Source: Lepidodermella squamata
Taxonomy: Eukaryota; Animalia; Gastrotricha
NCBI GenBank assembly: GCA_047495785.1
Contig: JBLDXI010000042.1
Span: forward strand, 992,001 to 1,056,000
DNA: 64,000 bases
Direction: 5' to 3'
Below the pieces are notes generated by a model. It worked only from the letters and a program-made list of their open reading frames with translations. It searched no databases and was not told the DNA's origin. A program made the position numbers and the translations under genes. Shown here piece by piece: positions 2,870 through 32,182 of the stretch. Numbering within the stretch: the first letter of the stretch is position 1; every line of letters begins with the position of its first letter.

Positions 2870-3380
2870 TTGCAAGTGAAGTGGGGTTCGGCGTATATTA
2901 TATATATATTTCAGCAAACGGCAAGAAGTATGTTGACTGAAAGAGGGGGAAGGATTCTTGGATTCCTGGATGACCTTACTCAGTTTTTCTTGAGAATTTT
3001 GTATTATCGAAATGCAGACCTTTAGGAAGCTCCCGCACCCGTCTCGAAACACGACAAACCTATCCACCCCCAAAGTTGAGGAACTTGCAGAAACCAAATT
3101 TTTCGTCAATTGTTCACCTGTAAAACACCTGTAACGCACATTTTCCCAGCAACCCTGATGACTATCAATCCAGAGACACCCAGATTGCATTGGTAAGGAT
3201 GATCCCTAACATTCTTAGCGGTACTTCGCTCTCTTTATCAGCCTGTTTATGAGATCGCTCATTGAAAGAAGCAGCATCACCTTCGAACCTTCAAGCCGCA
3301 TCAATATCTCACAATTTCAAGAATTTCGCCAAAAATCCCACTTTTCACTATTTTGTGTCAGTTCTATGTGGGACATCTCA
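2870..3380. repeat. Old dispersed repeat shared with ~21030-21330
   Basis: 2950-3035 matches the reverse complement of 21031-21120; 3191-3236 (tggtaaggatgatccctaacattcttagcggtacttcgctctctt) matches 21186-21231 directly. Confidence 0.55.
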
Positions 3381-4176
3381 TGGCGCTTAGCTATAAGCTG
3401 GAGACAACATGGTTTGAGATTCTGGTCGACGTTCATATATATTCATATGATACCGTCCGCAAGAAATGCAATAAAGGTACTTTTAAATTGTCTTAAGTAA
3501 GGCTCATCCACACCTGGCACTTGCTTTGCGACCCAAAAATCAAATTTCTTAACAGAATGCAAACTCTGAACCGCAGTTAATCTTTTGATAAGATGTTTCT
3601 TTTTTGAAATTTTTAATGTAAACAACAGCGCGAGGAATTTGCGACCATTTCCCTTTTTTATTTGAGATTGTGAAATCTGTGAAAATGGACGCAGTTAATC
3701 TTAGAATTTTTTATGGATCACTCTCTAGTGTGGGAAAATAGGGTCAAAATTCTCTATGAGATATCAACCAAATTGAATAAATTTTCAAGAGTTTTTCCTT
3801 TAGATTCTTCAACTTTTTCATGAGATTGGCTCTTCACGGCATTTTGGACGGTTTACGGTCGAATAAATTGGGAAACTAACGGATCGGCCTTCCAAAAGTT
3901 CCAAAGGTTTCCAAAAGTAGCCAAAAATGACAGATGCAGGACACTCTCATACAAGCCATGGGAACCGCCGGTATTAGATCAGACCAAAATAGAGGGCGGA
4001 TTTTGTTCAATTTTTATTGGCTAGTTCTCAACCAAAAAAAAACAATTTTATTTCTGAAAAGCGCATATTAATTTCGTAGCGCCAGCTTTTTTGGTTAGTA
4101 GCCCATTTTATTTCAATTCTCCCCATATATTAAAATAAATTTAGAAGTTCAAAGAGAGTTATAAATCTGCTTCGGA

Positions 4177-5755
4177 TTAACTTGACGCCTTGGTAGAGTT
4201 AGAGTTGGCGCTAAAATTAGCCCTACCACGAGGAGAGGCTTGGAGGGTCGCAAGGTAGACAGAAGCAGCAGCTCCAGCCGCGTCCATATTCGACTTTTGG
4301 GAGATTACGGGCATCACGTCGCCTACTTTCTTGGTGTCTCCATCCGTCCTAGCCTTGGCCGTACCATTGTTCTGTGCCACTGCTCCAGCACGTTCCTGCA
4401 CAGTCTTAGACCGAGCTGCATTGATGCCATCTGTCATCTTCTTCACTAACGTATCAAGATCAACGGTTCCATCAGCGCTAGCCGTAACGTTGAACTTTGT
4501 CATCGCCTGGCCGAAAGCGCCAGCGATCTGGGCATTAGGATCCTTCTTCCGTCCGCTATCCTGCTCGTTTTCCTTGCTTTTAGCAGCAGCGGCAGAAGCA
4601 GCAGCAGCGCCAGTCACGTTGCCTGTCGCGTTGCTCGGGGCGGGGTTCTTCGGTGGTGGATTTTGAGTAATGTTTTTCAGAAGAGCTGCGACATTCGGGT
4701 TGTTAGCCACAGACCCAACAATCGCCCCACGAATCGTCTCCAGCGGCTTCATATCAACGATTTTCGGAGGTTCCTGCCTTGGGTTGGTCGAGTTCCAAAT
4801 GGCGATCAGTTGCTTCTGAATATCCGTACCTGCGGCAGTAGCCAGTTTCAGCAGATCAGGCTTTGTAGCCAGGATTTTCGAGACCTCTGTGGCGTTGACG
4901 AGTTTTAAAATTTCAGGGCTTGAAGCATTGACTGCCCATCGAACAAGATCTTTTAATCCTATAGCAGTACCGTTGGTCAGCTTAACAAGGTCGGATCCAT
5001 CAGTTTTGTTATCAGCCTTGGGAGCGTCAGTCTTCGGAGCATCTTGCTTCGGAGCATCTTGCTTCGGAGCGTCTTGCTTCGGATTCCAAAGATTGCATAA
5101 TGCGTTCACTTGAGATTTCTCGTCATTTCCACCCGCAAGTGCTGCTTTGGCCAATTCAGAGTTGGCCGCCATCGGTTTCAGAAACATGACCACGTCAGTT
5201 GTGTTGACAGCGTTCAGGAAATTATCGCATGAAGCGTTGTAAGCCAATCGTTTAAGATCATCGAACGTAATCGCAGTTCCGTTCTTGAGTTTTATTTTAC
5301 CATCGCCAGTGGCCGTTGAGGTTGGACCGGATTCTCGGACTCCAGTTGAAGCTTGACCCGAGGTTGATGAAGAGGAATCCACTCTAACAGGTTGGGCAGC
5401 AGCTTGAGCGGTCGCAATAGCTATAATCATCTTTTGAACGTTATCCGATCCAGATGTGGCAGCGAGTTTTGCCATATCAGCATTTGCAGCGATCATCTTA
5501 GCCACCTCAGCTGTGTTGACTTGCTTCAGAAAATCAGCCGCAGATGTAGTATTGGCCAGCCGCTTCAATTCATCGAAAGTTACGGTACTCCCGTTGGTCA
5601 GTGGGAATTTAACCACATTAGCTGTCGAAACCGAAGTCGAAGTCGAAGCTTGGCCATTTGCCGAGGCGATCGACAACAACACTAAGAAAAAATATCGAAA
5701 AATTCCTATTTTGACGTGGAAGTCACTTCGACTCACCGAAAATGAGAAGGCGCAT
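4177..5755 (-). CDS. Secreted glycoprotein, 507 aa, with three ~75-aa internal repeats and PKQDA pentapeptide repeats; exons 5737-5755 and 4177-5681
   Basis: ATG at 5755; 55-nt GTGAGT...TTCTTAG intron (5682-5736) splices in frame to give signal peptide MRLLIFVLLSIASANG|Q. Confidence 0.85.
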
Positions 5756-6171
5756 TTTTAGAATATTTAGAATATTACAGAGCAAGAAAAATGAGAAGGC
5801 TCCTCGATCTCCGTTGAGCTCAAGTTATGTAAAGCCAATCCTTTCACGAGCGCATTTTTTGCGATCCCGGTGTGCTCACGAACTTCGAACCTCGAGGTAC
5901 ATTTCATTTTTTCAACCCTCGTGTTTTCCCGCTGGTGAGATAGGATGGCCAAGCCTCTATGTAGATTACTCCGGATAGCCGTTCTCGCTTTGGCTGTTAG
6001 CAGTGCCAACAAGAAAATTATTGGGGCATGACCGGCCGAGGAAGATTCCAGAAAGAAATGTCAAAATTTAGGTCAACATTTTGCTAACAATCGGAATTGA
6101 TTTTACATAAGGAATTTGTTGTAAATAAGAATTTATTTTTTAAATAGCCATTGTATAGAAGTCTCATTCGC

Positions 6172-7271
6172 TTATGATTTAGCGCCCCGATCCATCAACA
6201 TTTTAACAACCTCAACTCGATTGCTACGAGTTGCAAGGATCAAAGGCGTCTCGCCATCGTTATTCTTTGCGTAGTACGACGCCCCACGGCTGAGAAGAGC
6301 CGCGACAGTCTCGGCATTCCCAACTTCAGCCGCGTAATGCAGCGCTGTATTGCCCCAAATATCTCGCCCATTCACTACAACCGACTTGGCTAGCAGAACC
6401 CGGGCTATCTCGGCTTGGTTGAACTTCACCGCTGTCATCAAAGCGCTCATCTTGTTGTTATCTGCCAGATTCGGGTCGGCTCGTTTTTCGAGCAGCGTCT
6501 CTAAGATTTGCATATTCCCACTTTGAGCCGCGATCATCAAAGCAGTTGATCCATTCCGGTTTTTCACATTCACATCAGCCCCGTTGCTGCATAGCAGGCT
6601 TACCATCTCTGAATTGCCCATCGTTGCAGCGATGATTAGACCTGTTGAGAAATCTTCGTCCTTAGAATCGACTGGAACACCCTGTTTCAACAACCGGACA
6701 ACTTCTTCAGTGTCATTCCTCGAAACAGCTGGGATGAGTAGCGAGGGATGGGGTATGCATTTCGGTGTGATTGCTGGGCGCCATTGGCCAGGTTGCAAGC
6801 ACGTGAAGGTCGATAGGACAGTGTTGGATTTCGTAACCAAAGGCGTGTAGTGCTCCTCGCAGTGAAAGAAAACCATAGAACCTATATCGAGAACAGAGTT
6901 CTCTTCCAGTTTTGTAGGCGAATCTTCGCCTGTGATTAGATCCAATTGCGTGAAGTAGCCATTTTCTACATCAGGAATCATACACTAGATAAGAAAGAAT
7001 TTTTGCGGATTTTTAGGAATTTTTTGCAAATTTTTTCTACCTTGTCTTTCTCGCATGGCCCAGCATCAGTCCATTTACCGTTGGATTGGCAGAAAACAGA
7101 CGGAGCGCCATGGTTGTTGTAGCCCGGTTCACAGATGACCTCGCGTATTGACCCTGGTGTTGTAGATCCTGGTTGGATGAAACCGTTTTCCATGGTAACT
7201 AAGCTCGGGCAGTTTTTCGCCCATGATGCTAGTAGTTTTGAACTTATAACTAGGAAAACAAAAACAAACAT
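6172..7271 (-). CDS. Signal peptide - 2x Sushi/CCP - ankyrin-repeat protein, 347 aa; exons 7041-7271 and 6172-6984
   Basis: Phase-0 56-nt intron 6985-7040; CCP motifs CPSL..ENG..CEPGY..CQSNGKW..PC and CMIP..ENG..FHCEEHY..CLQPGQW..PKC; ~5-6 ankyrin repeats (GSTALMIAA, GNTALHYAA, GETPLILA). Confidence 0.9.
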
Positions 7272-20545: not shown

Positions 20546-22586
20546 TGTGGAAGGCGAAGGAAGGCAAAATTTAAGAAAAAACGCCCACCCCCGCAGTTAG
20601 CAATTTGCTTTTACCAAAATTGCTTTATAAAAGTTTAATTTATCAAAATTAATAATTTAATTTATCAAAATTGTTAAAATTTTCTACAAAATTAGCCAAA
20701 ATAAAAATAGTTGCGCAACTTCTGGAACACGCTGCAAGGCCGTTAACAAGTGAGAAGTGGGGTTATATGAGAAGGGGAGATTTTGAACGATCAATGAACG
20801 AGGAAGGAGTCGAACGATAAGAAAACGATGTTGATAATAATCAGGGATGCTCGCACGGTAAAATTTGCTGATTTTTAAAGAAAAGCGCGCCTAACAAAAT
20901 TCAGACTTTTAATTGCATCAAATTAATAATTCGTCGTTTAATAAAATCTGATGGCCTTTTCTCTTCCTAATAAATAAATCTAAGAGCCTTTTCCGCAGCT
21001 CATTAGGTTCACTCGTCTTTTGACGTGGATTGGAGCCTCGGGAAGGTCTGAATTGTGAACATTCAAAATCCTCAAAGAAAACTGAGAAAGATTTATATCA
21101 AGGAATCCAAGAATCCCCACTTCAACATGGAGCAAAAATTGACAAAACAGCCTTTGAATGAGCTTACCGTACGGACCGATGGAACTGGTAGGGATGATCC
21201 CTACCATCCCTAGCGATACTTCACTCTCTTCAAGTTTTTCAAGTCAAGACACTGTTTGCTGTTTGCTGGAAAATACAGAAAATACGCCAAACCCCACCTT
21301 TCATTTTTATCTTGGCATCTTATGATACATATAACTTTTCTTTCAATCTCTTCAAATCAGTCATCATCGCTAGTCTTCTTTCTTTTTACCCAGCAGGAAA
21401 AAAATCGTCCGTAGAGAGCTTTCGTTTGATTTTTCTCGACGAAGCAAAATTACGCCACAACAGAATTGAAAGGCTTTTCCGGAAAACACATCATCTACCT
21501 ACTGTCTACTGCATATAGTTGATAGTTTTAACCTCATAAGTTTTTTATTTAAAATGCTTTCGCACTATGGGCATGATCGTATGCCATACACGAACATGAC
21601 ACGAACATCGTAAACAGACCTCAACATCACCGGTATACAATGACGCAGAGCTGATGCGCTTGTATTTTCACTTTTCTCGAAAATTCGCAACAACTTGGTT
21701 GAAAGAAAGCTATTATACAACTAGCATTTACACACATCATCCACATCACTATCTGTTTATGTGATCTGCCATCCACACGGTGGCAAGAATAAAAGACATA
21801 ACGTACAACGTAATTAGCTCCAAACGTTTCGAGCAAACGACACCGGTGCAGTTATGCTCAATTGTGGGCTGGCTTGTATGATGCGCTTTTGCAACATCAG
21901 CCTAGGGCAAGTACGTGAAGAAAATTACAACAGAATAAAGGCATGGACGCATCGCCCAGATATTTCTTCACCAGTTAATATTTTGTTGCGCGATGATGTG
22001 AAAATTGGCGAGTCATGAAACGCCATCCATAGTGAAACTAATAAAACAAAACTGCAGGATACAAAAATTATATTAATGACAACAATTGGCAGGGCGGTAT
22101 CATTTACACTCATTAATTGCATGACATGCAATTTTATCGCGCAAATGCGTTTCGGCTAGTGGCCTGACGCAGAGCCTTAAATTTCTTCCAGTGACTGGGT
22201 CTCAATGAGCGAAGCCGCAAAACTCATAATTATTTTTTTGAACCTCCTTTGAATTATTCACTTATTTTAAAAGAAATTTAAAGTTGAATAAATCTTGAAT
22301 ATTTGATTTTTTCCTACATACGCATGGTAACATTTTGCCATAAGGAAATTGAATTACTCAATGGCTGCATAGCATCTTTTAAGATGGAATTTTTATTTCA
22401 AATTGTGACCCTATTTTCACAGTGGTATGACCCAGTGCGCATGTAGGAATAGGATTACCCTTAGGATGTATGAATAGGATTAATCTGATCTCTATGCCAT
22501 GGAGAAATCCAATTTCCTCCGTCTCTGAAACCCCGAGTGAGTTTGGCTCTATTCTGTTGGTTTCCTAGACTTTTTTTACAGTTACA

Positions 22587-25500
22587 ATGGCTTTCTATGC
22601 ACTACTCGCCGTAGCCGCAATATTTTCATCAGCTTCTGCTTGTCCGGCTACGACAACAACAACTTCATCAACATCAACGCCATGCCCTACAGCTGCTGGG
22701 AGCAGCTGCCCTAACGGGCAGAGTTGCCTTGCCTCAGCTCCGACTCCTTGCCCTGATGGGAAGAGTTGTTTTACTACATCAAATCCTTGCCCAAGCGGCC
22801 AGACGTGTCAAGCCCCAAGCGTCGCGGCTTCAACGACTTACAATCTCTGTCAAATCACTAAAACTTTAGGAGCAACATTTGTTACCAACTTGAAATTCTG
22901 CACGTCAAACGCTGGATCCTGCTCATCAGTCTTCACTACTGGAGCAACTGTAACGCATATAAATTTGAGATTCTTTCAACTTGTCAAAATGTTTTACAGA
23001 CGGCTAGCGGCGTAGCGGCTACATCGTTCGCGAGTTTCGACGAATGCTGCACAGCCGCAGCGACTGGTGCAACACTAGTTTACGAGATGTTCCCAACCGC
23101 TACCTCTGCGAAAATAACAGCTTGCTTCGGGGCTACAAAAAATAGCGTTTACGCCAGATGGCAACCAGCAACTGGTTCTGCTTACTGCATGCAATTCCCG
23201 CAAACCGCACTTAATAGCGTAGACACAATTGTAACCGATAATGGCGGGGTAAGACTATGTTCTTTCCAGTCTGATGCATAAATTGTTCAAGGGTTACGTG
23301 GAGTACTGTATGCCCAAGGCCCAAGGCTAAAAAAACCGAACAAACCAGATTTTTAACCCTCTAACCATTTCACGACGGGCGCGACGATTTCGGAATTTCG
23401 ACTTTGATCGACCTTTCGAGGAATATTGCTTTTTAAATTCGGAATGGCTATTCGTACATAAATATGTATGCGATTTTGGCTATTCGTACATATTTATGTA
23501 CGCGAATTTGGCTATTCATACATAAATATGTACGCGATTTCGGCTATTCGTACATAATATGTACGCGTTTTTGGCTATTCGTACATATGGAGGAAACACA
23601 CCTAAGACCACGAAAAACGGAATATGGCGTAGTATTGACCCGCACATTTTTATGTGGGAGTGGATATTCGCACACATTCTAGTACAGTTTTACGACTATT
23701 CGTAAATATTTTCAGAAAATGAAACTGCATCATTTTTATTCTCATTTGCATCATTCAAACCTTTTTCATGATCAATATTCGGTGTTATCATTAAGTATCT
23801 TAACGAATACTAGGTTTCAGTTCAACTAAGGATTAGGACTTTAGGCTCCGGTCTTCGGCCGCGTTTTTTCGATGATGGGAAGACGGTTGCATGCTGACTT
23901 TCGAGGCAGCTAATAAGGTGATTTCGCATGTCCGTTGAGGATTTGAAGCAGGTCACACCAGGATCGCCGCCATCGATGAGAAGAAGTAAGCATGCAGCTG
24001 CGAAAACGCCGCAATCGGTACCGTTTGATTGCCTCGGACATGGCTCAAGGTGAACCTTCAGCCGCCCGTCTTCCATCAGCAACCGGTACCTATCCCTCAG
24101 TTGGGCGCGAAGCTCTTCATCCATTGATGTAGCCGGCAAAGAGTCATAAACTGCAACCTTGCGGTGGAAAGTAGTCGACAAAACCCAATGGGTGTTTCTG
24201 ATGTTGTGGAAATAAAATCCTTGTTCGGTTGCCACATCGCCAGCAAGTGCAACCGTTGTAGCACAAGGGGCCGTTTCTAGCCGAAATGACGATTTAGCGA
24301 GCGCAATTGACGTTATAGCATCCATAACTTCGTCTGTGAGCCACCCTCCTTGCTCAATTATCTCCTTCTCGTCGAGCGACAGGTTCAACTCCGGGACCCA
24401 AGCCCTATCGATTTCTTCGAGAAGGCTTATTTGCTTGAGGTCTTTGTCGACCAAGCAGACGCTCGGGCAATGCAGGCGCTTTCCAGGTTTTCCAATCATT
24501 GACTTGATGTGTTTTGCTGCAGTTCGGCGTTTGATGCACATGTTGAGCGACGTAAACTCCTTTCGAAACTGGTCCTTCTCTTCTTCTGTCAGCCTGCAAT
24601 TCGCTGGATAAGTTGCGAAGTCATCGGCGTTCACCGTGTGGCCCGTGTGCCTAAAAACGGCAGCAGCTACATGCCAGAGTCCATCTTTCCTTAATGTAAG
24701 CGACAAACGCGCCTTGCACTCAGAATACAGATAACCTAAAGTTGTACTTGGGTTTCAATGCTCTAAGAATCAACATTTTATTACCTTGGTTTTCTCGGAC
24801 ACCATTGCTCTTTGTCGCACGCTCAGTACTGTGGCAACATTCGACAATCAGTTGCTTGGGCATCGTTGAACGCTTTATGAAAGGCTGATGAGTTTGATCG
24901 CAATGCTTCTTCACCTTGCCGAACAGTACGCTCTTCGTCATGTTAAAAGAAGCGCCATGAGTGAAAGAGCCTGGGTCGCAGTCGATAACAAGACCTGGAA
25001 TCAAAGTCGGACCGGGATTCATCTCAACATTGCCCGACTGAAGCAGTACATAAAATATTATCAGTCTCCCTCGCTTGCCCGAACCGTTGTTGACGGCAAT
25101 TTTGAACTTGACGTGGCACGTCACGGTTAGCCACGCTGGCGTTAGCCTGGGCGAGGAGGATGGCGATACAGAATTGAAACCAGGGTGGCAGCCATTGCCA
25201 ATTAGGACAAGAAAAAGTAAAGTAGATATCATTCTACCTATAGGTGAACTCTGAATATTAGATTGAACACAATTTCACAATGAACCCGTTTGAACCGAAT
25301 TATAAGCTGAATTGTGGTTGTATAAAACAAGAGCTTCCAGCCTAATCTAACTTATGTCTGGGATTCCAGTATAATCTGACCAATGTTCAAAATATAATCG
25401 AGAAGCAAAGCAAAGCAAATGTGGGTTGTATTCGGGACTAGACCTCATAAAAAAGATCCGATGTCCATATTATTTCAAACGACATCTTCAAAATTAAGGC

Positions 25501-26621
25501 CATTATTGAGAAATATAGAATGAAAGATATCAAAATTTTGATCGAAATCCAAGAAAACTTGAGGTTAGCTGTTGTTTAAAGACTGGCTTAATGAAAGTAG
25601 ATAGTGGTTTGAGAAGCTAATATTTCCCCAAGACAGCGCGCTTCCTCCGGTAACAAGGGCATCAGCGTTTTCGCAAGGAATTTCATTAATGTGATGGGAC
25701 GGTGACGAGCCGTATAAACTGGTTCAATGCTAAAATATTTCATTTAACAACCTGAACAAATTTTTTATTTTTTTTTATTTTTATTTTCTCGCTCAGTAGT
25801 AGACACTTTTGTATCTCCATTCATATATTGCTTTTCAAAAATTACACTCATTTTTTATGGACATTTATTTATTTCATCTCACTTATCTGGCTGATTTATG
25901 TTTATTAAGCCTATTTAACCACATTTTTTACCATATGTACGAATAGCCAAAATCGCGTACATATTATGTACGAATAGCCGAAATCGCGTACATATTTATG
26001 TATGAATAGCCAAAATCGCGTACATAAATATGTACGAATAGCCAAAATCGCGTACATATTTATGTATGAATAGCCTCACTCTTTTAAATTTTAAATTTTA
26101 AATTTTTTCAACTTGAAATTTCATTGGTTTCTGATAATTGTCTGATCCAACAAAACATACCACGGGTCCGCCGTAGTCTCCCAGACTTCAACTTTTTTTT
26201 GATAGCTAACAAGAGTGAGGGAATCTTAGGGACATTCATGGGAGTAGTTTAGAATCTAAAATCCCAAAGCTGAAGGCACCTGACCCAGAAATTAGGATGC
26301 TCGAGAAATCGCCTGAAATCAGCTGGGCGGATTCGGCCCGTTTTTGTAACGGTGAACGGGGTAATCCGATGAACTCGGAACAAAAAATACCATGAAGTCC
26401 CTCCTCCCTCCCCCGCTTAATTCAAGGAAGGTATGGAGGACGAGAGTCGTTCCAAAACAGCGGCAATGATTTATGAAGTATTTTTCCTGTTCTTTCAGGT
26501 ACCATGGGAACATGACACTTACACGTCATGCTGTGCGACAATTGCTATGATGAACGGAAATGTAAATTACGGAATACCTAGCAAGGCGGTATTTGGTGTC
26601 AAGCCTATGACTTGCTACTGA
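22587..26621 (+). CDS. Secreted Thr/Cys-rich protein, copy 1; exons 22587-22949, 23000-23248, 23292-23318(?) and 26499-26621 (alternatively ends at TAA 23330)
   Basis: Signal peptide; three CPxGxS/TC repeats; two copies of a C..(F/Y)C..CC..YxxP..K..C(F/Y) unit; terminal exon has a good acceptor and an open frame in both duplicates; last donor uncertain (GC). Confidence 0.7.
23440..26081. mobile_element. Non-autonomous Mutator/MULE (Foldback-type) DNA transposon, 2.6 kb
   Basis: ~145-bp TIRs (23446-23590 / 25931-26075) built from ~4.5 tandem ~32-bp units GGCTATTCGTACATAAATATGTACGCGATTTT; 9-bp direct repeat TTTTAAATT at 23431-23439 and 26082-26090; absent from the duplicate unit. Confidence 0.88.
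23822..25232 (-). CDS. Transposon-borne polyprotein: hydrophobic leader - 2A-like motif - FAR1/WRKY-GCM1-like zinc finger - Ulp1/C48 cysteine protease; exons 24785-25232 and 23822-24735
   Basis: 49-nt intron 24736-24784 joins the two ORFs in frame; LLQSGNVEMNPGP; ECCH...ECKARL...WHV...HTGH; WLTDEVM, HWVL, VYDSL, RQSNGTDCGVF; basic C-terminus KKRGRRP. Confidence 0.85.
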
Positions 26622-27914: not shown

Positions 27915-28455
27915 TTGTAATCTACATCAACGACTTGGCTCTTGTTCCCACATACTCAAAAATTGTCTTCTACGCCGACAACACCACAATGAAATAATAA
28001 TAGCCTGGGCTACTACGTAATTCGCGATAAGCTGCGAGATATGGACCCTAATGCTAAGCGGTGTAGGTGGCGGTTACCGAATGACTCTCAAATGAAGGAT
28101 CGATTCCATCCGGGAATTACGCGGAATTAAGTTACGCATGTTCAAGGTCACACGTGGCCCGTGTTTGACGAAGTCACGGAGTTCCCCGTCAACTGTGAAA
28201 GGCCTCAGGCCGACAGTGGTAATCTTCTGCTCTAGTCAGAACATCGTCGAAGCCACGCGACTCCTCCAGCTCGATGTTCAGAAAGTAGCAGACTGGCTCG
28301 GAAGCAACAGCTTGATGGTAAACGCCAAGAAATCGTTACTAATGGTTGTCGGTGCTAAAAGTGAATCGATTACTGAAGTAAGAATCATTATGAAAGACGC
28401 TTCTCTCAGGCCGTCTGACAAAATGGAAATTCTCGGCTTTATCCTCGATCGATAG
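27915..28455 (+). mobile_element. Non-LTR retrotransposon reverse-transcriptase relic, interrupted by ~220 nt
   Basis: VIYINDL...VFYADNTT (degenerate YADD), resuming as LQLDVQKVADWLGSNSLMVNAKKS...ILGFILD. Confidence 0.85.
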
Positions 28456-29359: not shown

Positions 29360-32182
29360 TTTTATCCCGCCAAAAACAGAGATGTCGTTTGACTTTTCTC
29401 GACGAAGCAGCAAAAAACACAGTGGAAAGTTTTAAGCTCTCTAGTTTTTTTCCTTCAAAATGCTTTCGCTCTACAAGCATGATCGTATGCCATCCACGGT
29501 GATGCAAACAACTAAAACAGACTTAACATCGCCGGTATACAACGACGAAGAGCTGTGTGCGCATGTATTTTCACTGTTCTAGGCGAAGCTCGTTCACTTG
29601 GTTGAAAAGATATTACAACCAGCATTTACACACATCATCCACCGGATCGTTTTCATCATTATATGCTCTTTTGTATTCTGCCATCCACACGGTGGCAATA
29701 ATAATAATATACACAACATAAAACGTCGTAATTAGCTTCAACGTTTCGAGCGAACGAGCAAACCGGTTGCTCACTTGTGGGCTGGCTTGTATGACGCGCT
29801 TGCAACATCAGCCTAGGGCAAAAAGAGAATACAGCCATGGACGGATCGTCTAGATAGTCCTTCACCAGTTAATATTTGTCGTGCGATGATGTGAAAATTG
29901 GCGAGTCATGAAACGCCATCCACAGTGATGAAACTAATAAAACAAAACTACAGGATGCAAAAATTATAATAATGACAACAATTGACAGGGCGGTATCATT
30001 AAGGTACACGTCACTAATTGCATGCCATGCAATTTTATCGCGCAGGTGCGTTTCGGCTAGTGTCCTGAGGCAGAAACGTAAATTTTCCCAGTGAACGTGT
30101 TTCAATGAGCGCGGCCGCAAAACTCGTTCTTTTTTGAACCTTCTTTGAATTATTTTCTTATTTCAAAAGAAATTGTTGAATAAATCTTGAATATTTGATT
30201 TATTCCTACATGCGCATATAGTAAAATTCAGCCATTGCGAAATTGAATTTCTCTATGGCTAAATTAAATTTTTTAAGGTGGACTTTTTATTTCAATGTTT
30301 AATCTATTTCACAGGGTTATGAACCTTCAACACCCCAAATAGTGGCTCCAGAGAGGGCGCATGTAGGAATAGGATTACTCTATTCACCACTCTCTTTCCC
30401 TCCCCTCTGGAACCCCGAGTGAGTTTTGCTCTATTCTGCTGGTTTTCTAGAAGTTTCCACATTTAAAATGGCTTTCTATGCACTACTCGCCGTAGCCGCG
30501 GTATTTTCATCAGTCTCTGCTTGCCCGGCTTCGACAACAACAACTTCAACAACATCAACGCCATGCCCTACAGCTGCTGTGAGTAGCTGCCCTAACGGGC
30601 AGAGTTGCCTTGCCTCAGCTCTGACTCCTTGCCCTGATGGGAAGAGTTGTCTTACGACATCAAATCCTTGCCCAAGTGGCCAGACTTGTCAAGCACCAAG
30701 CGGCCCGACTACAACGACTTACAATCTCTGTCAAATCACTACAACTCTAGGAGCAACCTCTGTGAATAACTTGAAATTCTGCACATCAAACGCTGGATCC
30801 TGCTCATCAGTCTTCACTACTGGAGCAACTGTAACACCTATAAATTTGAGATTCTTTCAACTTGTCATAATGTTTTACAGACAGCTACTGGCGTGGCGGC
30901 TACATCGTTCGCGAGTTTCGACGAATGCTGCACAGCCGCAGCGACTGGTGCTACACTAGTTTACGAGACGATACCAACCGATACCTCTACGAAAATAACA
31001 GCTTGCTTTGGGGCTACAAAAACGAAAGCTTACGCTATATGGCTAGGACCAGGTTTTGCGCCTTACTGCATCCAATTCCCGCAAACCGCTAAAAGTAGCG
31101 TAGACATAATGGGAACTGATAACGGGGTGAGACAATTCTATTCAGTCTAATACTCAAAGTGTGCGAAGAGTTACGTGGAGTAATGTATCCCCCAAGGCCA
31201 AGAAACCGAAAAAACCACAGGGGACACTTTAACCCTTTCACGGCGGGAAGTACGATTCAGAATTTCGATATTGAAAATTCGCAAAAATTGAATTAGATGA
31301 ATTCTTGGTCGCCCTTTTAAGAAATATTGCATTTCAATGATGGATACAAGGTGTTAAGACCAGGACACCGTTATCTTGCATGGTCAGAATGTACTAGCAA
31401 TTTGAAAATAGTCCACTTAAGGTTAAAATTTCAATTTTTTCAAAAATCGCCTGAAATCAGCTGGGCTGATAGGACGATTTCGGCCAATTTTTTGTACAGC
31501 CTCAACGGTCATAGACAACGGCAAACCAATTTCGAAATCGTGGTCAGGGCCTTCTTAAACAGGCGACAAATATTTTTTCTCAACCAGATACAAAATTCCG
31601 CCATAAATGGGTTTATCATGGGAACCAAAAAAGCCCCCCTCTCCTCGACCCCGCTTATAATTCAGAGAGAGTCGTTTCAAAGCAGCGGCAATGATTTATG
31701 ATGTATTTTCCCGGTTTTTTCAGACACCAAGGGAATATGACTCTTACACGGCATGCTGTGTGACAGTTGCCACGACGAACGGTGGTATCAGATACGGAGC
31801 TTCTAGCCATGCTGTATTTGGAGTCAAGCCTATGACCTGCTACTGATTATTCTCGCTTGGTTCAACCAGCCGTGAAAACAGATTAAAATACATATTTGAC
31901 GTGGATTCTTGCTAATTTATGACTCGATATATCGGCTATTTTCTTCATCACTTCATCACACGATATTTTGATATGTACTTGGTAGCCTAATGGATTGCTT
32001 TTAATCCTGCTATGTTCAGCAAAATAAAAAACTTTTGGTTTCCACTTTTCAAAGAATGAGTTCTGGACTTGGAACTGTATAATATACTGTATAGATTCGA
32101 TACTACTATCCCCATTTAAATACTTTTTGACGCTGAAAACTGTGCAAAAAAACAAAACGTCGTTAAAAAATAGCGGGATTCC
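29360..32182 (+). repeat. Local segmental duplication, unit 2
   Basis: Colinear with unit 1 but lacks the MULE. Confidence 0.85.
30468..31846 (+). CDS. Secreted Thr/Cys-rich protein, copy 2; nonsense change in exon 3 (TAC>TAA, 31181-31183), possible pseudogene
   Basis: Same exon structure as copy 1; terminal exon ~31724-31846 TPREYDSYTACC...KPMTCY* is still open. Confidence 0.65.

What the first reader, a model, noticed from the sequence alone, without database searches (positions are those of the whole stretch)
25008..25232. 2A-like (StopGo) ribosome-skipping motif inside a DNA-transposon gene
Seen: codons 57-75 of the MULE ORF read LIIFYVLLQSGNVEMNPG|P, a hydrophobic run followed by SG-N-V-E-x-N-P-G-P. 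It sits after a 74-aa leader that begins with a signal-peptide-like stretch (MISTLLFLVLIGNG) and directly before a zinc finger and a protease ending in a basic NLS-like tail. Established: the 2A consensus is D(V/I)ExNPG|P; it is known from RNA viruses, non-LTR retrotransposons and some invertebrate cellular genes such as sea-urchin NLRs. I do not recall a Mutator-type example. Inference: co-translational skipping would release a secreted or membrane leader and a nuclear FAR1-Ulp1 protein; the D>N variant may give partial skipping, acting as a dosage or localisation switch.
Basis: partly seen in the sequence, partly recalled or inferred. Interest (0 to 1): 0.82.

Follow-up and report, generated by a model that had tools for sequence, protein, structure and literature searches.

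The report
2A skipping site heading a Mutator transposase
A cut-and-paste (Mutator-type) jumping gene in this small animal genome has a virus-style 2A "ribosome-skipping" peptide and a short greasy leader in front of its transposase. Published 2A surveys I could search report this only for retrotransposons and a few host genes, and its activity is untested here.

Summary
**Observation.** It is confirmed. On the minus strand, an ORF starting at 25232 reads LIIFYVLLQSG-NVEMNPG|P at codons 57-75. It lies in frame with a FAR1/WRKY-type zinc finger and a Ulp1 protease once a 49-nt intron is removed.

**What the element is.**
- It spans 23440-26081 and is a true Mutator-superfamily transposon.
- It has 145-nt TIRs and 9-bp target duplications in three copies.
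- Longer copies elsewhere carry the MULE DDE domain and a SWIM-like motif.
- The window copy is an internally deleted, non-autonomous derivative.

**The motif.**
- It fits the expanded StopGo core (D/G/C/N)(V/I)ExNPGP and the L-rich "...SG" upstream class.
- The genome holds 18 such octamers against about 0.3 expected. All those I could classify head transposon ORFs: two LINE types and two unrelated MULE families.
- In the second MULE family the 2A 20-mer shows 13 synonymous and 1 amino-acid change. Its flanks show 21 and 44 (p = 3.5e-5).

**Origin.** None of 150 foreign relatives has NPGP, so leader plus 2A is a lineage-specific N-terminal addition.

**Not shown.**
- Skipping activity, transcription, and selection in this particular family are all unshown.
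- The secreted-leader and dosage-switch ideas are speculation.

**Earlier scan notes.** The scan noted the same design earlier on other DNA of this genome (P-type and Mutator elements).

**Verdict.** It is a new variant of a known kind, of moderate to high interest.

The parts
23431..23439 (.). Left 9-bp target-site duplication TTTTAAATT
   Evidence: The same 9 bases recur at 26082-26090. The copies on C3 and C24 have their own 9-bp duplications.
23440..23590 (.). Left terminal inverted repeat, made of 4.5 copies of a 32-bp unit
   Evidence: 145-nt arms, 97% complementary; period 32, 4.5 copies; exact end.
23825..24373 (-). Ulp1/C48-like cysteine protease domain (residues about 271-453 of the spliced product), followed by the stop codon at 23824-23822
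   Evidence: Pfam Peptidase_C48 scores 19.2-20.3 bits, just under the 20.7 cut-off. PDB 6dg4_A Ulp1-like SUMO protease matches at E 8.3e-6, with the HW, DS, PRQ.NG and DCGVF motifs aligned. It is 32% identical to the Ulp1 tail of relative P0038.
24410..24484 (-). Remnant of the DDE core (..CLVDKDLKQISLLEEI..) bounded by two in-frame internal deletion junctions (near 24410 and 24481-24484)
   Evidence: the C24 copy has about 359 and about 509 extra bases at these junctions, and the C3 copy has about 1.8 kb; those segments encode the MULE domain and a SWIM-like CxC...CxH motif.
24629..24974 (-). FAR1/WRKY-type zinc-finger DNA-binding domain (residues about 87-185), interrupted by the intron
   Evidence: alignments to the N-terminal domains of relatives P0004, P0030, P0069 and P0075. 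In the second MULE family the equivalent exon hits Pfam FAR1 at 22 bits, E 2.6e-4.
24736..24784 (-). 49-nt phase-1 intron (GTAATA...TTTAG)
   Evidence: its removal gives one 453-aa ORF; relatives align without a gap across the junction. No RNA evidence is available.
24785..25232 (-). Coding exon 1: leader, 2A and the first half of the zinc finger
25011..25232 (-). 74-residue leader (Met1-Gly74) with an 11-residue hydrophobic N-terminal stretch
   Evidence: hydropathy 2.7-2.9 over residues 1-12; no 19-residue TM-like segment.
25008..25067 (-). 2A/StopGo 20-mer RLIIFYVLLQSGNVEMNPGP; the core octamer NVEMNPGP is 25031-25008
   Evidence: It fits (D/G/C/N)(V/I)ExNPGP and the L-rich ...(A/S/C)G upstream class of PMC12846837.
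25931..26081 (.). Right terminal inverted repeat (4.5 copies of a 32-bp unit)
26082..26090 (.). Right 9-bp target-site duplication TTTTAAATT

Best explanation
**What it is.** The region is the 5' coding end of a Mutator-superfamily DNA transposon, a MULE whose transposase carries a C-terminal Ulp1 protease. In this lineage the transposon has acquired an N-terminal add-on. The add-on is a 74-residue leader whose last 20 or so residues form a class-A 2A/StopGo element.

**How it most likely works.**
1. Translation starts at the ATG at 25232.
2. When the nascent ...YVLLQSGNVEMNPG lies in the ribosomal exit tunnel, the Gly74-Pro75 bond is not made and the leader is released.
3. Translation resumes at Pro75. 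This yields the FAR1-type DNA-binding domain, transposase and Ulp1 as a separate protein. In this deleted window copy the product is only the DNA-binding domain plus Ulp1.
4. The probable effects are that the transposase is freed from a hydrophobic, signal-like peptide, and that its yield is lowered. Both effects have been proposed for the 2A sites of LINEs.

**Shown.** The motif, its frame, its position at the domain boundary, transposon membership, the absence of 2A from foreign relatives, and peptide-level purifying selection on the equivalent 2A of a second MULE family in this genome.

**Inferred.** Skipping itself, its efficiency with Asn at p12, any targeting role of the leader, and transcription.
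For: **Fit to known 2A sites.**
- The core octamer and upstream hexamer VLLQSG fit the published expanded motif and the L-rich SG class.
- Against F2A/P2A numbering it shares F4, L7, Q9 (as in P2A), G11, V13, E14, N16 and PGP (my reading of the sequence).
- Natural p12=N sites are highly active in vitro. Met at p15 is tolerated.

**In frame with the transposase.**
- There is no stop between Met1 and the zinc finger.
- The relatives' start Met aligns about 12 residues after Pro75.
- The only in-frame Met codons upstream of the domain are Met1 and Met71, and Met71 lies inside the 2A itself.

**Genome-wide pattern.**
- There are 18 octamers against 0 in the control.
- All classifiable hits head transposon ORFs: C2H2+RT LINEs, APE LINEs, and a second, distantly related MULE family (about 24% identity in the DDE region) with 2A at the same place.

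**Selection in the second MULE family.** The 2A 20-mer has 13 synonymous and 1 amino-acid-changing codon difference. The flanks have 21 and 44. Fisher p = 3.5e-5.

**Age of the Asn variant.**
- All five family copies have Asn at p12.
- The 80%-identical dead sister copies read Ser (AGT) there, one nucleotide step from AAT (Asn). This suggests the non-Asp state is old and not decay in a single copy.

**Mutator membership.**
Against: - **No direct evidence of skipping.**
- **No RNA evidence.** The only possible RNA run touches the TIRs alone.
- **Selection cannot be measured in this family.** The coding copies are at least 97% identical. The two 80% copies are dead: a roughly 109-bp MITE is inserted in the 2A region, 13 bp covering E-x-N-P-G are deleted, and differences are spread evenly over codon positions at 13/12/15.
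- **D12 is sensitive in model 2As.** No D12 substitution, Asn included, reached the activity threshold in F2A or P2A.
- **No complete copy examined.** All three larger copies carry different internal deletions or a frameshift, so no intact autonomous copy was seen.
- **The leader is atypical.** Other 2A-bearing transposons here have multi-TM leaders, whereas this one has a single short hydrophobic stretch.
Confidence: 0.6

Rival explanations
1. The site is translated but works mainly as a translational attenuator. It would stall or reduce output with little clean skipping, because Asn replaces Asp at p12. The element would then act as self-restraint on transposase dose and not as a two-protein device.
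For: A large screen of eukaryotic 2A-like peptides found that reduced protein abundance is the commonest outcome for retrotransposon 2As (PMC13405545). Odon et al. proposed down-regulation of the downstream product (PMC3708506). No D12 substitution in F2A or P2A reached the activity threshold.
Against: Natural p12=N sites tested in their own context gave about 90% or more StopGo. The upstream context here is close to the active L-rich class.
Confidence: 0.2
2. The leader and 2A are a passively carried, non-functional relic. A fragment was captured from another 2A-bearing transposon such as a LINE 5' end, as MULEs often capture foreign DNA. It stays in frame only because the copies are young.
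For: MULEs are known for sequence capture (established knowledge). LINEs with similar ...LLL.(T/S)(A/G)G-D-I-E-x-NPGP sites exist in the same genome. No selection can be measured in this family. Relatives abroad lack the module.
Against: Outside the 2A 20-mer the leader has no significant similarity to any LINE or MULE-B leader (z 0.87 or lower for the families that could be classified). The insertion point is exactly the N-terminal domain boundary, as in the independent MULE-B family, where the 2A is under strong purifying selection. The module predates the 20% divergence from the sister subfamily.
Confidence: 0.12
3. The 2A region is not part of the transposase translation product. Translation would really start at Met71 (inside the octamer) or Met98, and the upstream 70 codons would be a 5' leader or an upstream ORF.
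For: Met is at p15 in 13 of the 18 octamers of this genome, an unusual preference compared with viral sites, so internal initiation at this ATG is conceivable. There are no RNA or protein data.
Against: Starting at Met98 would cut into the start of the FAR1-type domain as aligned to relatives. The frame is open from Met1, which has A at -3. In MULE-B the residues upstream of the Met are conserved at the peptide level, which a non-translated leader would not explain.
Confidence: 0.05
4. The match to the 2A consensus is a chance occurrence.
For: Only 8 fixed residues are involved.
Against: About 0.3 matches are expected in the whole genome and 18 are observed, with 0 in the control. The upstream L-rich SG context and N-terminal position match as well.
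Confidence: 0.03

Closest known systems
2A-like sequences at the N-terminus of APE-type non-LTR retrotransposon ORFs (Odon et al. 2013, PMC3708506; Heras et al. 2006 for L1Tc)
   Same: A class-A D(V/I)ExNPGP-type site lies in the N-terminal region of a transposon's enzymatic ORF, just upstream of its first functional domain. It is proposed to separate an upstream peptide and to limit enzyme yield.
   Different: The host element here is a class II cut-and-paste DNA transposon (Mutator superfamily), not a retrotransposon. p12 is Asn. The upstream product is only 74 residues long.
N-terminal 2A-like signal sequences of sea-urchin NOD-like receptors (Roulston et al. 2016, PMC4981915)
   Same: A hydrophobic N-terminal peptide ends in a 2A. 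The published model is dual targeting: unskipped chains go to the secretory pathway and skipped chains stay in the cytosol.
   Different: There the 2A itself is the signal sequence at the very N-terminus of a host gene. Here a separate 11-residue hydrophobic stretch lies 55 residues upstream of the 2A, in a transposon. No targeting was tested.
Viral class-A StopGo sites with an L-rich upstream motif (F2A, P2A, T2A; Li et al. 2026, PMC12846837)
   Same: The core octamer lies within (D/G/C/N)(V/I)ExNPGP. The upstream hexamer ends in SG. F4, L7, Q9 and G11 are equivalent.
   Different: It is cellular or transposon-borne, not viral. It combines the rare p12 Asn with p15 Met. It sits near the start of the ORF and not between polyprotein domains.
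MULE transposases fused to Ulp1 (C48) proteases, known from plant KI-MULEs (my recollection) and seen here in metagenomic relatives P0038, P0075 and P0029
   Same: The order is a FAR1/WRKY zinc finger, MULE DDE, SWIM, then a C-terminal Ulp1 with an FP.S.KRG-type tail.
   Different: None of the 150 closest relatives has an NPGP motif or a leader.
Second MULE family of the same genome (for example contig C48, locus L055) and, according to earlier scan notes, P-element-type transposons
   Same: The design is a hydrophobic leader, then 2A, then the DNA-binding domain of a DNA transposase.
   Different: The MULE-B leader is multi-exon and has several TM-like segments. Its core is the canonical DVEMNPGP and it has no Ulp1. 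Its transposase is only about 24% identical.

Membership tests
2A/StopGo class A recoding site | Core octamer (D/G/C/N)(V/I)ExNPGP | tested here: met
   NVEMNPGP at 25031-25008. Motif definition from PMC12846837.
2A/StopGo class A recoding site | Suitable upstream context: a hydrophobic or L-rich hexamer ending in (A/S/C)G before p12 | tested here: met
   The upstream hexamer is VLLQSG, preceded by RLIIFY. Class description.
2A/StopGo class A recoding site | Lies in frame inside a translated ORF that continues after the Pro | tested here: inconclusive
   The frame is open from Met1 through the zinc finger to Ulp1 after removal of the 49-nt intron. Translation and transcription are not shown.
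2A/StopGo class A recoding site | Peptide sequence kept by purifying selection | tested here: inconclusive
   It cannot be measured in this family. It is met in the parallel MULE-B family, with 13 synonymous and 1 amino-acid change, p = 3.5e-5.
2A/StopGo class A recoding site | Failure of Gly-Pro bond formation shown experimentally | not testable with these tools
   It needs a dual-reporter translation assay.
Mutator/MULE superfamily DNA transposon | 9-11-bp target-site duplication | tested here: met
   9-bp TSDs in all three copies examined: TTTTAAATT, TTTTTTCTA and AATAATAAA.
Mutator/MULE superfamily DNA transposon | Long terminal inverted repeats | tested here: met
   145-nt arms at 97% complementarity, built of 32-bp units.
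Mutator/MULE superfamily DNA transposon | MULE DDE transposase domain | tested here: met
   PF10551 scores 31.8 bits against a 27.6 cut-off, and PF21056 scores 47.1 bits, in the C24 copy. In the window copy most of this domain is deleted.
Mutator/MULE superfamily DNA transposon | N-terminal FAR1/WRKY zinc finger and a SWIM finger after the DDE | tested here: inconclusive
   The zinc finger is supported only by pairwise alignments to relatives. The SWIM-like CxC...CxH was seen by eye in the C3 copy and has no Pfam hit.
Ulp1/SENP (peptidase C48) | Catalytic His, Asp, Gln and Cys in the C48 fold | tested here: met
   HW, DS, PRQ.NG and DCGVF are aligned to the 6dg4_A Ulp1-like SUMO protease at E 8.3e-6. 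Pfam is just below cut-off at 19.2-20.3 against 20.7. The fold was not modelled.

The most novel reading that the evidence does not exclude
In this animal a 'hydrophobic leader + 2A' design has been adopted by unrelated mobile elements of both classes: two LINE types, two distant Mutator families and, per earlier unverified scan notes, P elements. It would then be a general transposon expression strategy in this lineage. StopGo would be used by cut-and-paste DNA transposons to release their transposase from a membrane-directed or signal-like peptide. This would be the first use of 2A recoding by class II elements.
Probability: 0.5. Interest if true: 0.75.

Novelty: new variant of a known kind. 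Interest (0 to 1): 0.62.

Why it matters
2A/StopGo recoding is documented in RNA viruses, non-LTR retrotransposons and a few invertebrate host genes. The surveys and screens I could search do not mention DNA transposases. These include two 2025-2026 catalogues, one listing thousands of eukaryotic 2A-like peptides and the other about 2,200 predicted 2A peptides from viruses and eukaryotes.

A functional 2A at the head of Mutator transposases would have three consequences.
- It would extend recoding to class II elements.
- It would give a natural example of the rare p12-Asn core in a cellular context.
- It would pose a concrete question: why do unrelated transposons in one genome all put a hydrophobic leader in front of a 2A? 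Candidate answers are dose limitation, ER-localised translation, or disposal of unskipped fusions.

The question is directly testable with short reporters.

Tried and rejected
- **Leader homology to LINE leaders.** A BLASTP hit of E 3e-6 vanished when the 2A 20-mer was removed (z 0.87, 186 of 1000 shuffles as good). I therefore do not claim capture from those LINEs.
- **Supposed intron in the diverged copies.** The roughly 108-bp extra segment in the 80% copies on C23 and C54 looked at first like an intron splitting the 2A. It is a repeated MITE-like element of about 109 bp with dozens of copies, so those copies are simply disrupted.
- **The NIEMNPGP fragments on C4.** I first read these as evidence of conservation. 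They are rearranged non-coding derivatives of the same element and say nothing about selection.
- **Codon-position test between this family and the 80% copies.** The result was flat at 13/12/15 and uninformative.
- **RNA evidence.** Only one possible RNA run was found, and its contigs touch only the TIRs.
- **Homologues of exon 1.** The word-index protein search found none in its 0.55-1.75x length range. The ESM Atlas feature search gave no usable hit. The exact-sequence contig look-up found nothing.
- **Taxonomy of relatives.** Cluster look-up gave only unnamed metagenomic records, including TARA Oceans, other ENA assemblies and Logan.
- **p12 = Gly or Cys variants.** None occurs in this genome.
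- **Pfam on the spliced protein.** The spliced 453-aa protein could not be sent to Pfam or to folding because it has no reference. It was compared only inside scripts.
Full report
**1. The observation**

The feature is on the minus strand. The ORF 25232..24720 (170 aa) begins MISTLLFLVLIGNG. Residues 57-75 read LIIFYVLLQSGNVEMNPGP. The octamer NVEMNPGP is at 25031-25008.

The ORF stops at 24720, and the Ulp1-like ORF (24706..23822) lies in another frame. A 49-nt GT..AG phase-1 intron (24784-24736) joins them into one 453-aa ORF. Relatives P0030, P0069 and P0075 align without a gap across the predicted junction...VRENQ-G-YLYSEC.... I take that as good support for the splice, though not as proof.

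**2. What the element is**

- A genome search found near-identical copies on contigs C24 and C3 and partial copies elsewhere.
- Comparing them shows that the window element runs from 23440 to 26081.
- Its TIR arms are 145 nt long and 97% complementary. Each arm is built of 4.5 copies of a 32-bp unit.
- All three copies have their own 9-bp target duplication: TTTTAAATT here, TTTTTTCTA on C3 and AATAATAAA on C24.
- The longer copies encode a MULE DDE domain. PF10551 scores 31.8 bits, above its cut-off, and PF21056 scores 47 bits. The C3 copy also has a SWIM-like CxC...CxH stretch.
- The C-terminal domain is a Ulp1/C48 protease. Pfam is marginal. A solved Ulp1-like SUMO protease matches at E 8.3e-6 with the His, Asp, Gln and Cys motifs aligned.

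This is therefore a genuine Mutator-superfamily element with a Ulp1 tail.

The window copy has two in-frame internal deletions (near 24484 and 24410) that remove most of the DDE core. It would encode leader, 2A, DNA-binding domain and Ulp1 only. The C24 and C3 copies are also defective, each in a different way. I saw no intact copy among those examined.

**3. Is the motif more than chance?**

- A DNA pattern encoding [DN][VI]ExNPGP matches 18 times in the 121-Mb genome and 0 times when read backwards. From base composition I expect about 0.3 matches.
- Five hits belong to this family.
- Five belong to LINE-like ORFs with C2H2 fingers and a reverse transcriptase.
- Two belong to LINEs with an APE endonuclease.
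- Five belong to a second MULE family.
- One could not be classified.
- Where enough upstream sequence was available, the 2A follows a hydrophobic leader and precedes the first functional domain.
- Variants with Gly or Cys at p12 do not occur in this genome.

**4. Fit to known 2A sites**

Li et al. 2026 (PMC12846837) expanded the core to (D/G/C/N)(V/I)ExNPGP. They reported that natural p12=N sites were about 90% active or better in reticulocyte lysate. They also described L-rich upstream hexamers ending in (A/S/C)G. The hexamer here is VLLQSG.

Numbered as in F2A/P2A, the site shares F4, L7, Q9 (as in P2A), G11, V13, E14, N16 and PGP.

Against this, a 2026 mutational-scan preprint found no D12 substitution above its activity threshold in F2A or P2A, although Met at p15 was tolerated. 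Activity with Asn is therefore context-dependent and cannot be predicted here.

**5. Position and origin**

- The start Met of complete relatives aligns about 12 residues after Pro75. For example, residue 23 of P0004 aligns to our residue 109.
- None of the 150 best relatives from a 1.84-billion-protein library contains NPGP, where about 0.2 would be expected by composition.
- I read five contigs carrying four of the closest complete relatives. None has NPGP or a core-like motif upstream on the coding strand, and their ORFs are closed 4-38 codons above the Met.
- Leader plus 2A is therefore a lineage-specific N-terminal addition to an otherwise complete transposase.
- Several relatives (P0038, P0075, P0029) also carry the Ulp1 tail, so that fusion is older than the 2A.
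- I could not identify the donor of the module. The apparent similarity to a LINE leader is due to the 2A itself.

**6. Evidence for function**

Within this family, selection cannot be measured.
- The coding copies are at least 97% identical.
- The two 80%-identical copies (C23, C54) are dead. A roughly 109-bp repeated MITE sits in the 2A region, 13 bp covering E-x-N-P-G are missing, and differences are flat over codon positions.
- Those copies still read ...LLLQSG-S-V.. . The module, and probably a non-Asp p12, therefore predate that split.

The best functional evidence is indirect.
- The second MULE family is only about 24% identical in the DDE region.
- It has HHRVLLLANDVEMNPGP at the same place, immediately before its FAR1 domain.
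- Between its two subfamilies the 20-mer shows 13 synonymous-only and 1 amino-acid-changing codon difference. The flanks show 21 and 44. Fisher p = 3.5e-5.
- That shows peptide-level selection on a 2A in a Mutator element of this genome.

**7. The leader**

- Residues 1-12 are strongly hydrophobic, but there is no 19-residue TM-like segment.
- The leaders of MULE-B and of the LINEs each have two to seven such segments.
- The stretch looks like a short signal peptide.
- Published models that fit are dual targeting by N-terminal 2A-like signal sequences (PMC4981915), down-regulation of the downstream product (PMC3708506) and the 'reduction' phenotype (PMC13405545).

**8. Expression**

No RNA run holds the coding part. 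One possible RNA run has contigs only on the TIRs, including a TIR-to-TIR joint (23554>25857) that looks like a MITE derivative. The other run is DNA-like.

**9. Novelty**

- Full-text searches and targeted reading of five 2A papers found no mention of a DNA transposase carrying 2A. The five are Odon 2013, Rao 2025, Li 2026 and two 2026 preprints.
- Supplementary tables were not available to me, so an unremarked entry in those catalogues cannot be excluded.
- This scan has already noted the same design elsewhere in this genome: P-type transposons (s1-401898, s1-422668, s1-391701), a Mutator element (s1-407525) and another DNA transposase (s1-395200). I did not reuse those notes as evidence. 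I found the MULE-B family independently, and it may be the element of s1-407525.

**10. Verdict**

- The element is a true MULE with a Ulp1 tail.
- The 2A is an in-frame, lineage-specific N-terminal add-on of a type shown to be under selection in a parallel family.
- Skipping, its efficiency and the leader's role are unproven, and the window copy is a defective derivative.
- I rate it a new variant of a known kind, with interest 0.62.

Noticed in passing
Genome-wide; loci L037-L054: 13 of the 18 uninterrupted 2A octamers in this genome have Met at the variable p15 position (DVEM-, DIEM-, NVEM- and NIEMNPGP), across unrelated transposon families. Viral sites prefer P, S, T, L, E, K, Q or A there. 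The cause could be shared ancestry of the module or use of the ATG as an internal start.
   Followed up: partly
L055 (G000:C48:945500-955400), about 3016-6325 on the + strand; also L056, L057 and L038: A second Mutator family has several TM-like leader exons, a canonical DVEMNPGP, then FAR1, MULE and SWIM-like parts and no Ulp1. Its 2A is under strong purifying selection between subfamilies.
   Followed up: yes
L048 and L052 (APE LINE); L042, L043, L045, L050 and L037 (C2H2 + RT LINE): LINE ORFs begin with a leader of about 200-420 residues upstream of the 2A, holding two to seven TM-like segments. Such a long membrane-like region upstream of a LINE 2A seems unusual.
   Followed up: partly
window 24410-24484: Both internal deletions of the window copy keep the reading frame. 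The copy could therefore still make a DNA-binding-domain-plus-Ulp1 mini-protein, reminiscent of truncated transposase repressors. This may equally be coincidence.
   Followed up: no
L012 (G000:C23:992250-992950) and L013 (C54): A MITE-like repeat of about 109 bp with dozens of copies across the genome is inserted inside the 2A-coding region of the 80%-diverged sister copies.
   Followed up: partly
L032 and L033 (G000:C4, about 473.4 kb and about 524.9 kb): Two inverted copies about 51 kb apart hold a rearranged fragment of this MULE. They carry the 2A piece (NIEMNPGP) joined to an upstream piece of the element in the opposite orientation.
   Followed up: partly
window 23554 / 25857: A contig in run X1 joins the two TIR regions directly and skips 2,302 bases. 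This suggests that a MITE-like derivative of this element exists in another sample.
   Followed up: no
window 21925-23281 and 29869-31150: Two near-identical paralogous units flank the transposon-rich stretch. Each has a Cys/Thr-rich secreted-looking ORF (MAFYALLAVAA...PCP repeats) and a small hydrophobic ORF on the other strand, so a local duplication of host genes is likely.
   Followed up: no
window 28138-28455 (+): This ORF looks by eye like the C-terminal part of a non-LTR reverse transcriptase (...ADWLGSNSLMVNAKKS...), but Pfam gave no hit.
   Followed up: partly
L058-L062: The closest foreign relatives of this MULE-Ulp1 transposase come from metagenome assemblies (two TARA Oceans scaffolds, two other ENA assemblies and one Logan run). 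This points to unnamed eukaryotes as hosts of the clade.
   Followed up: no
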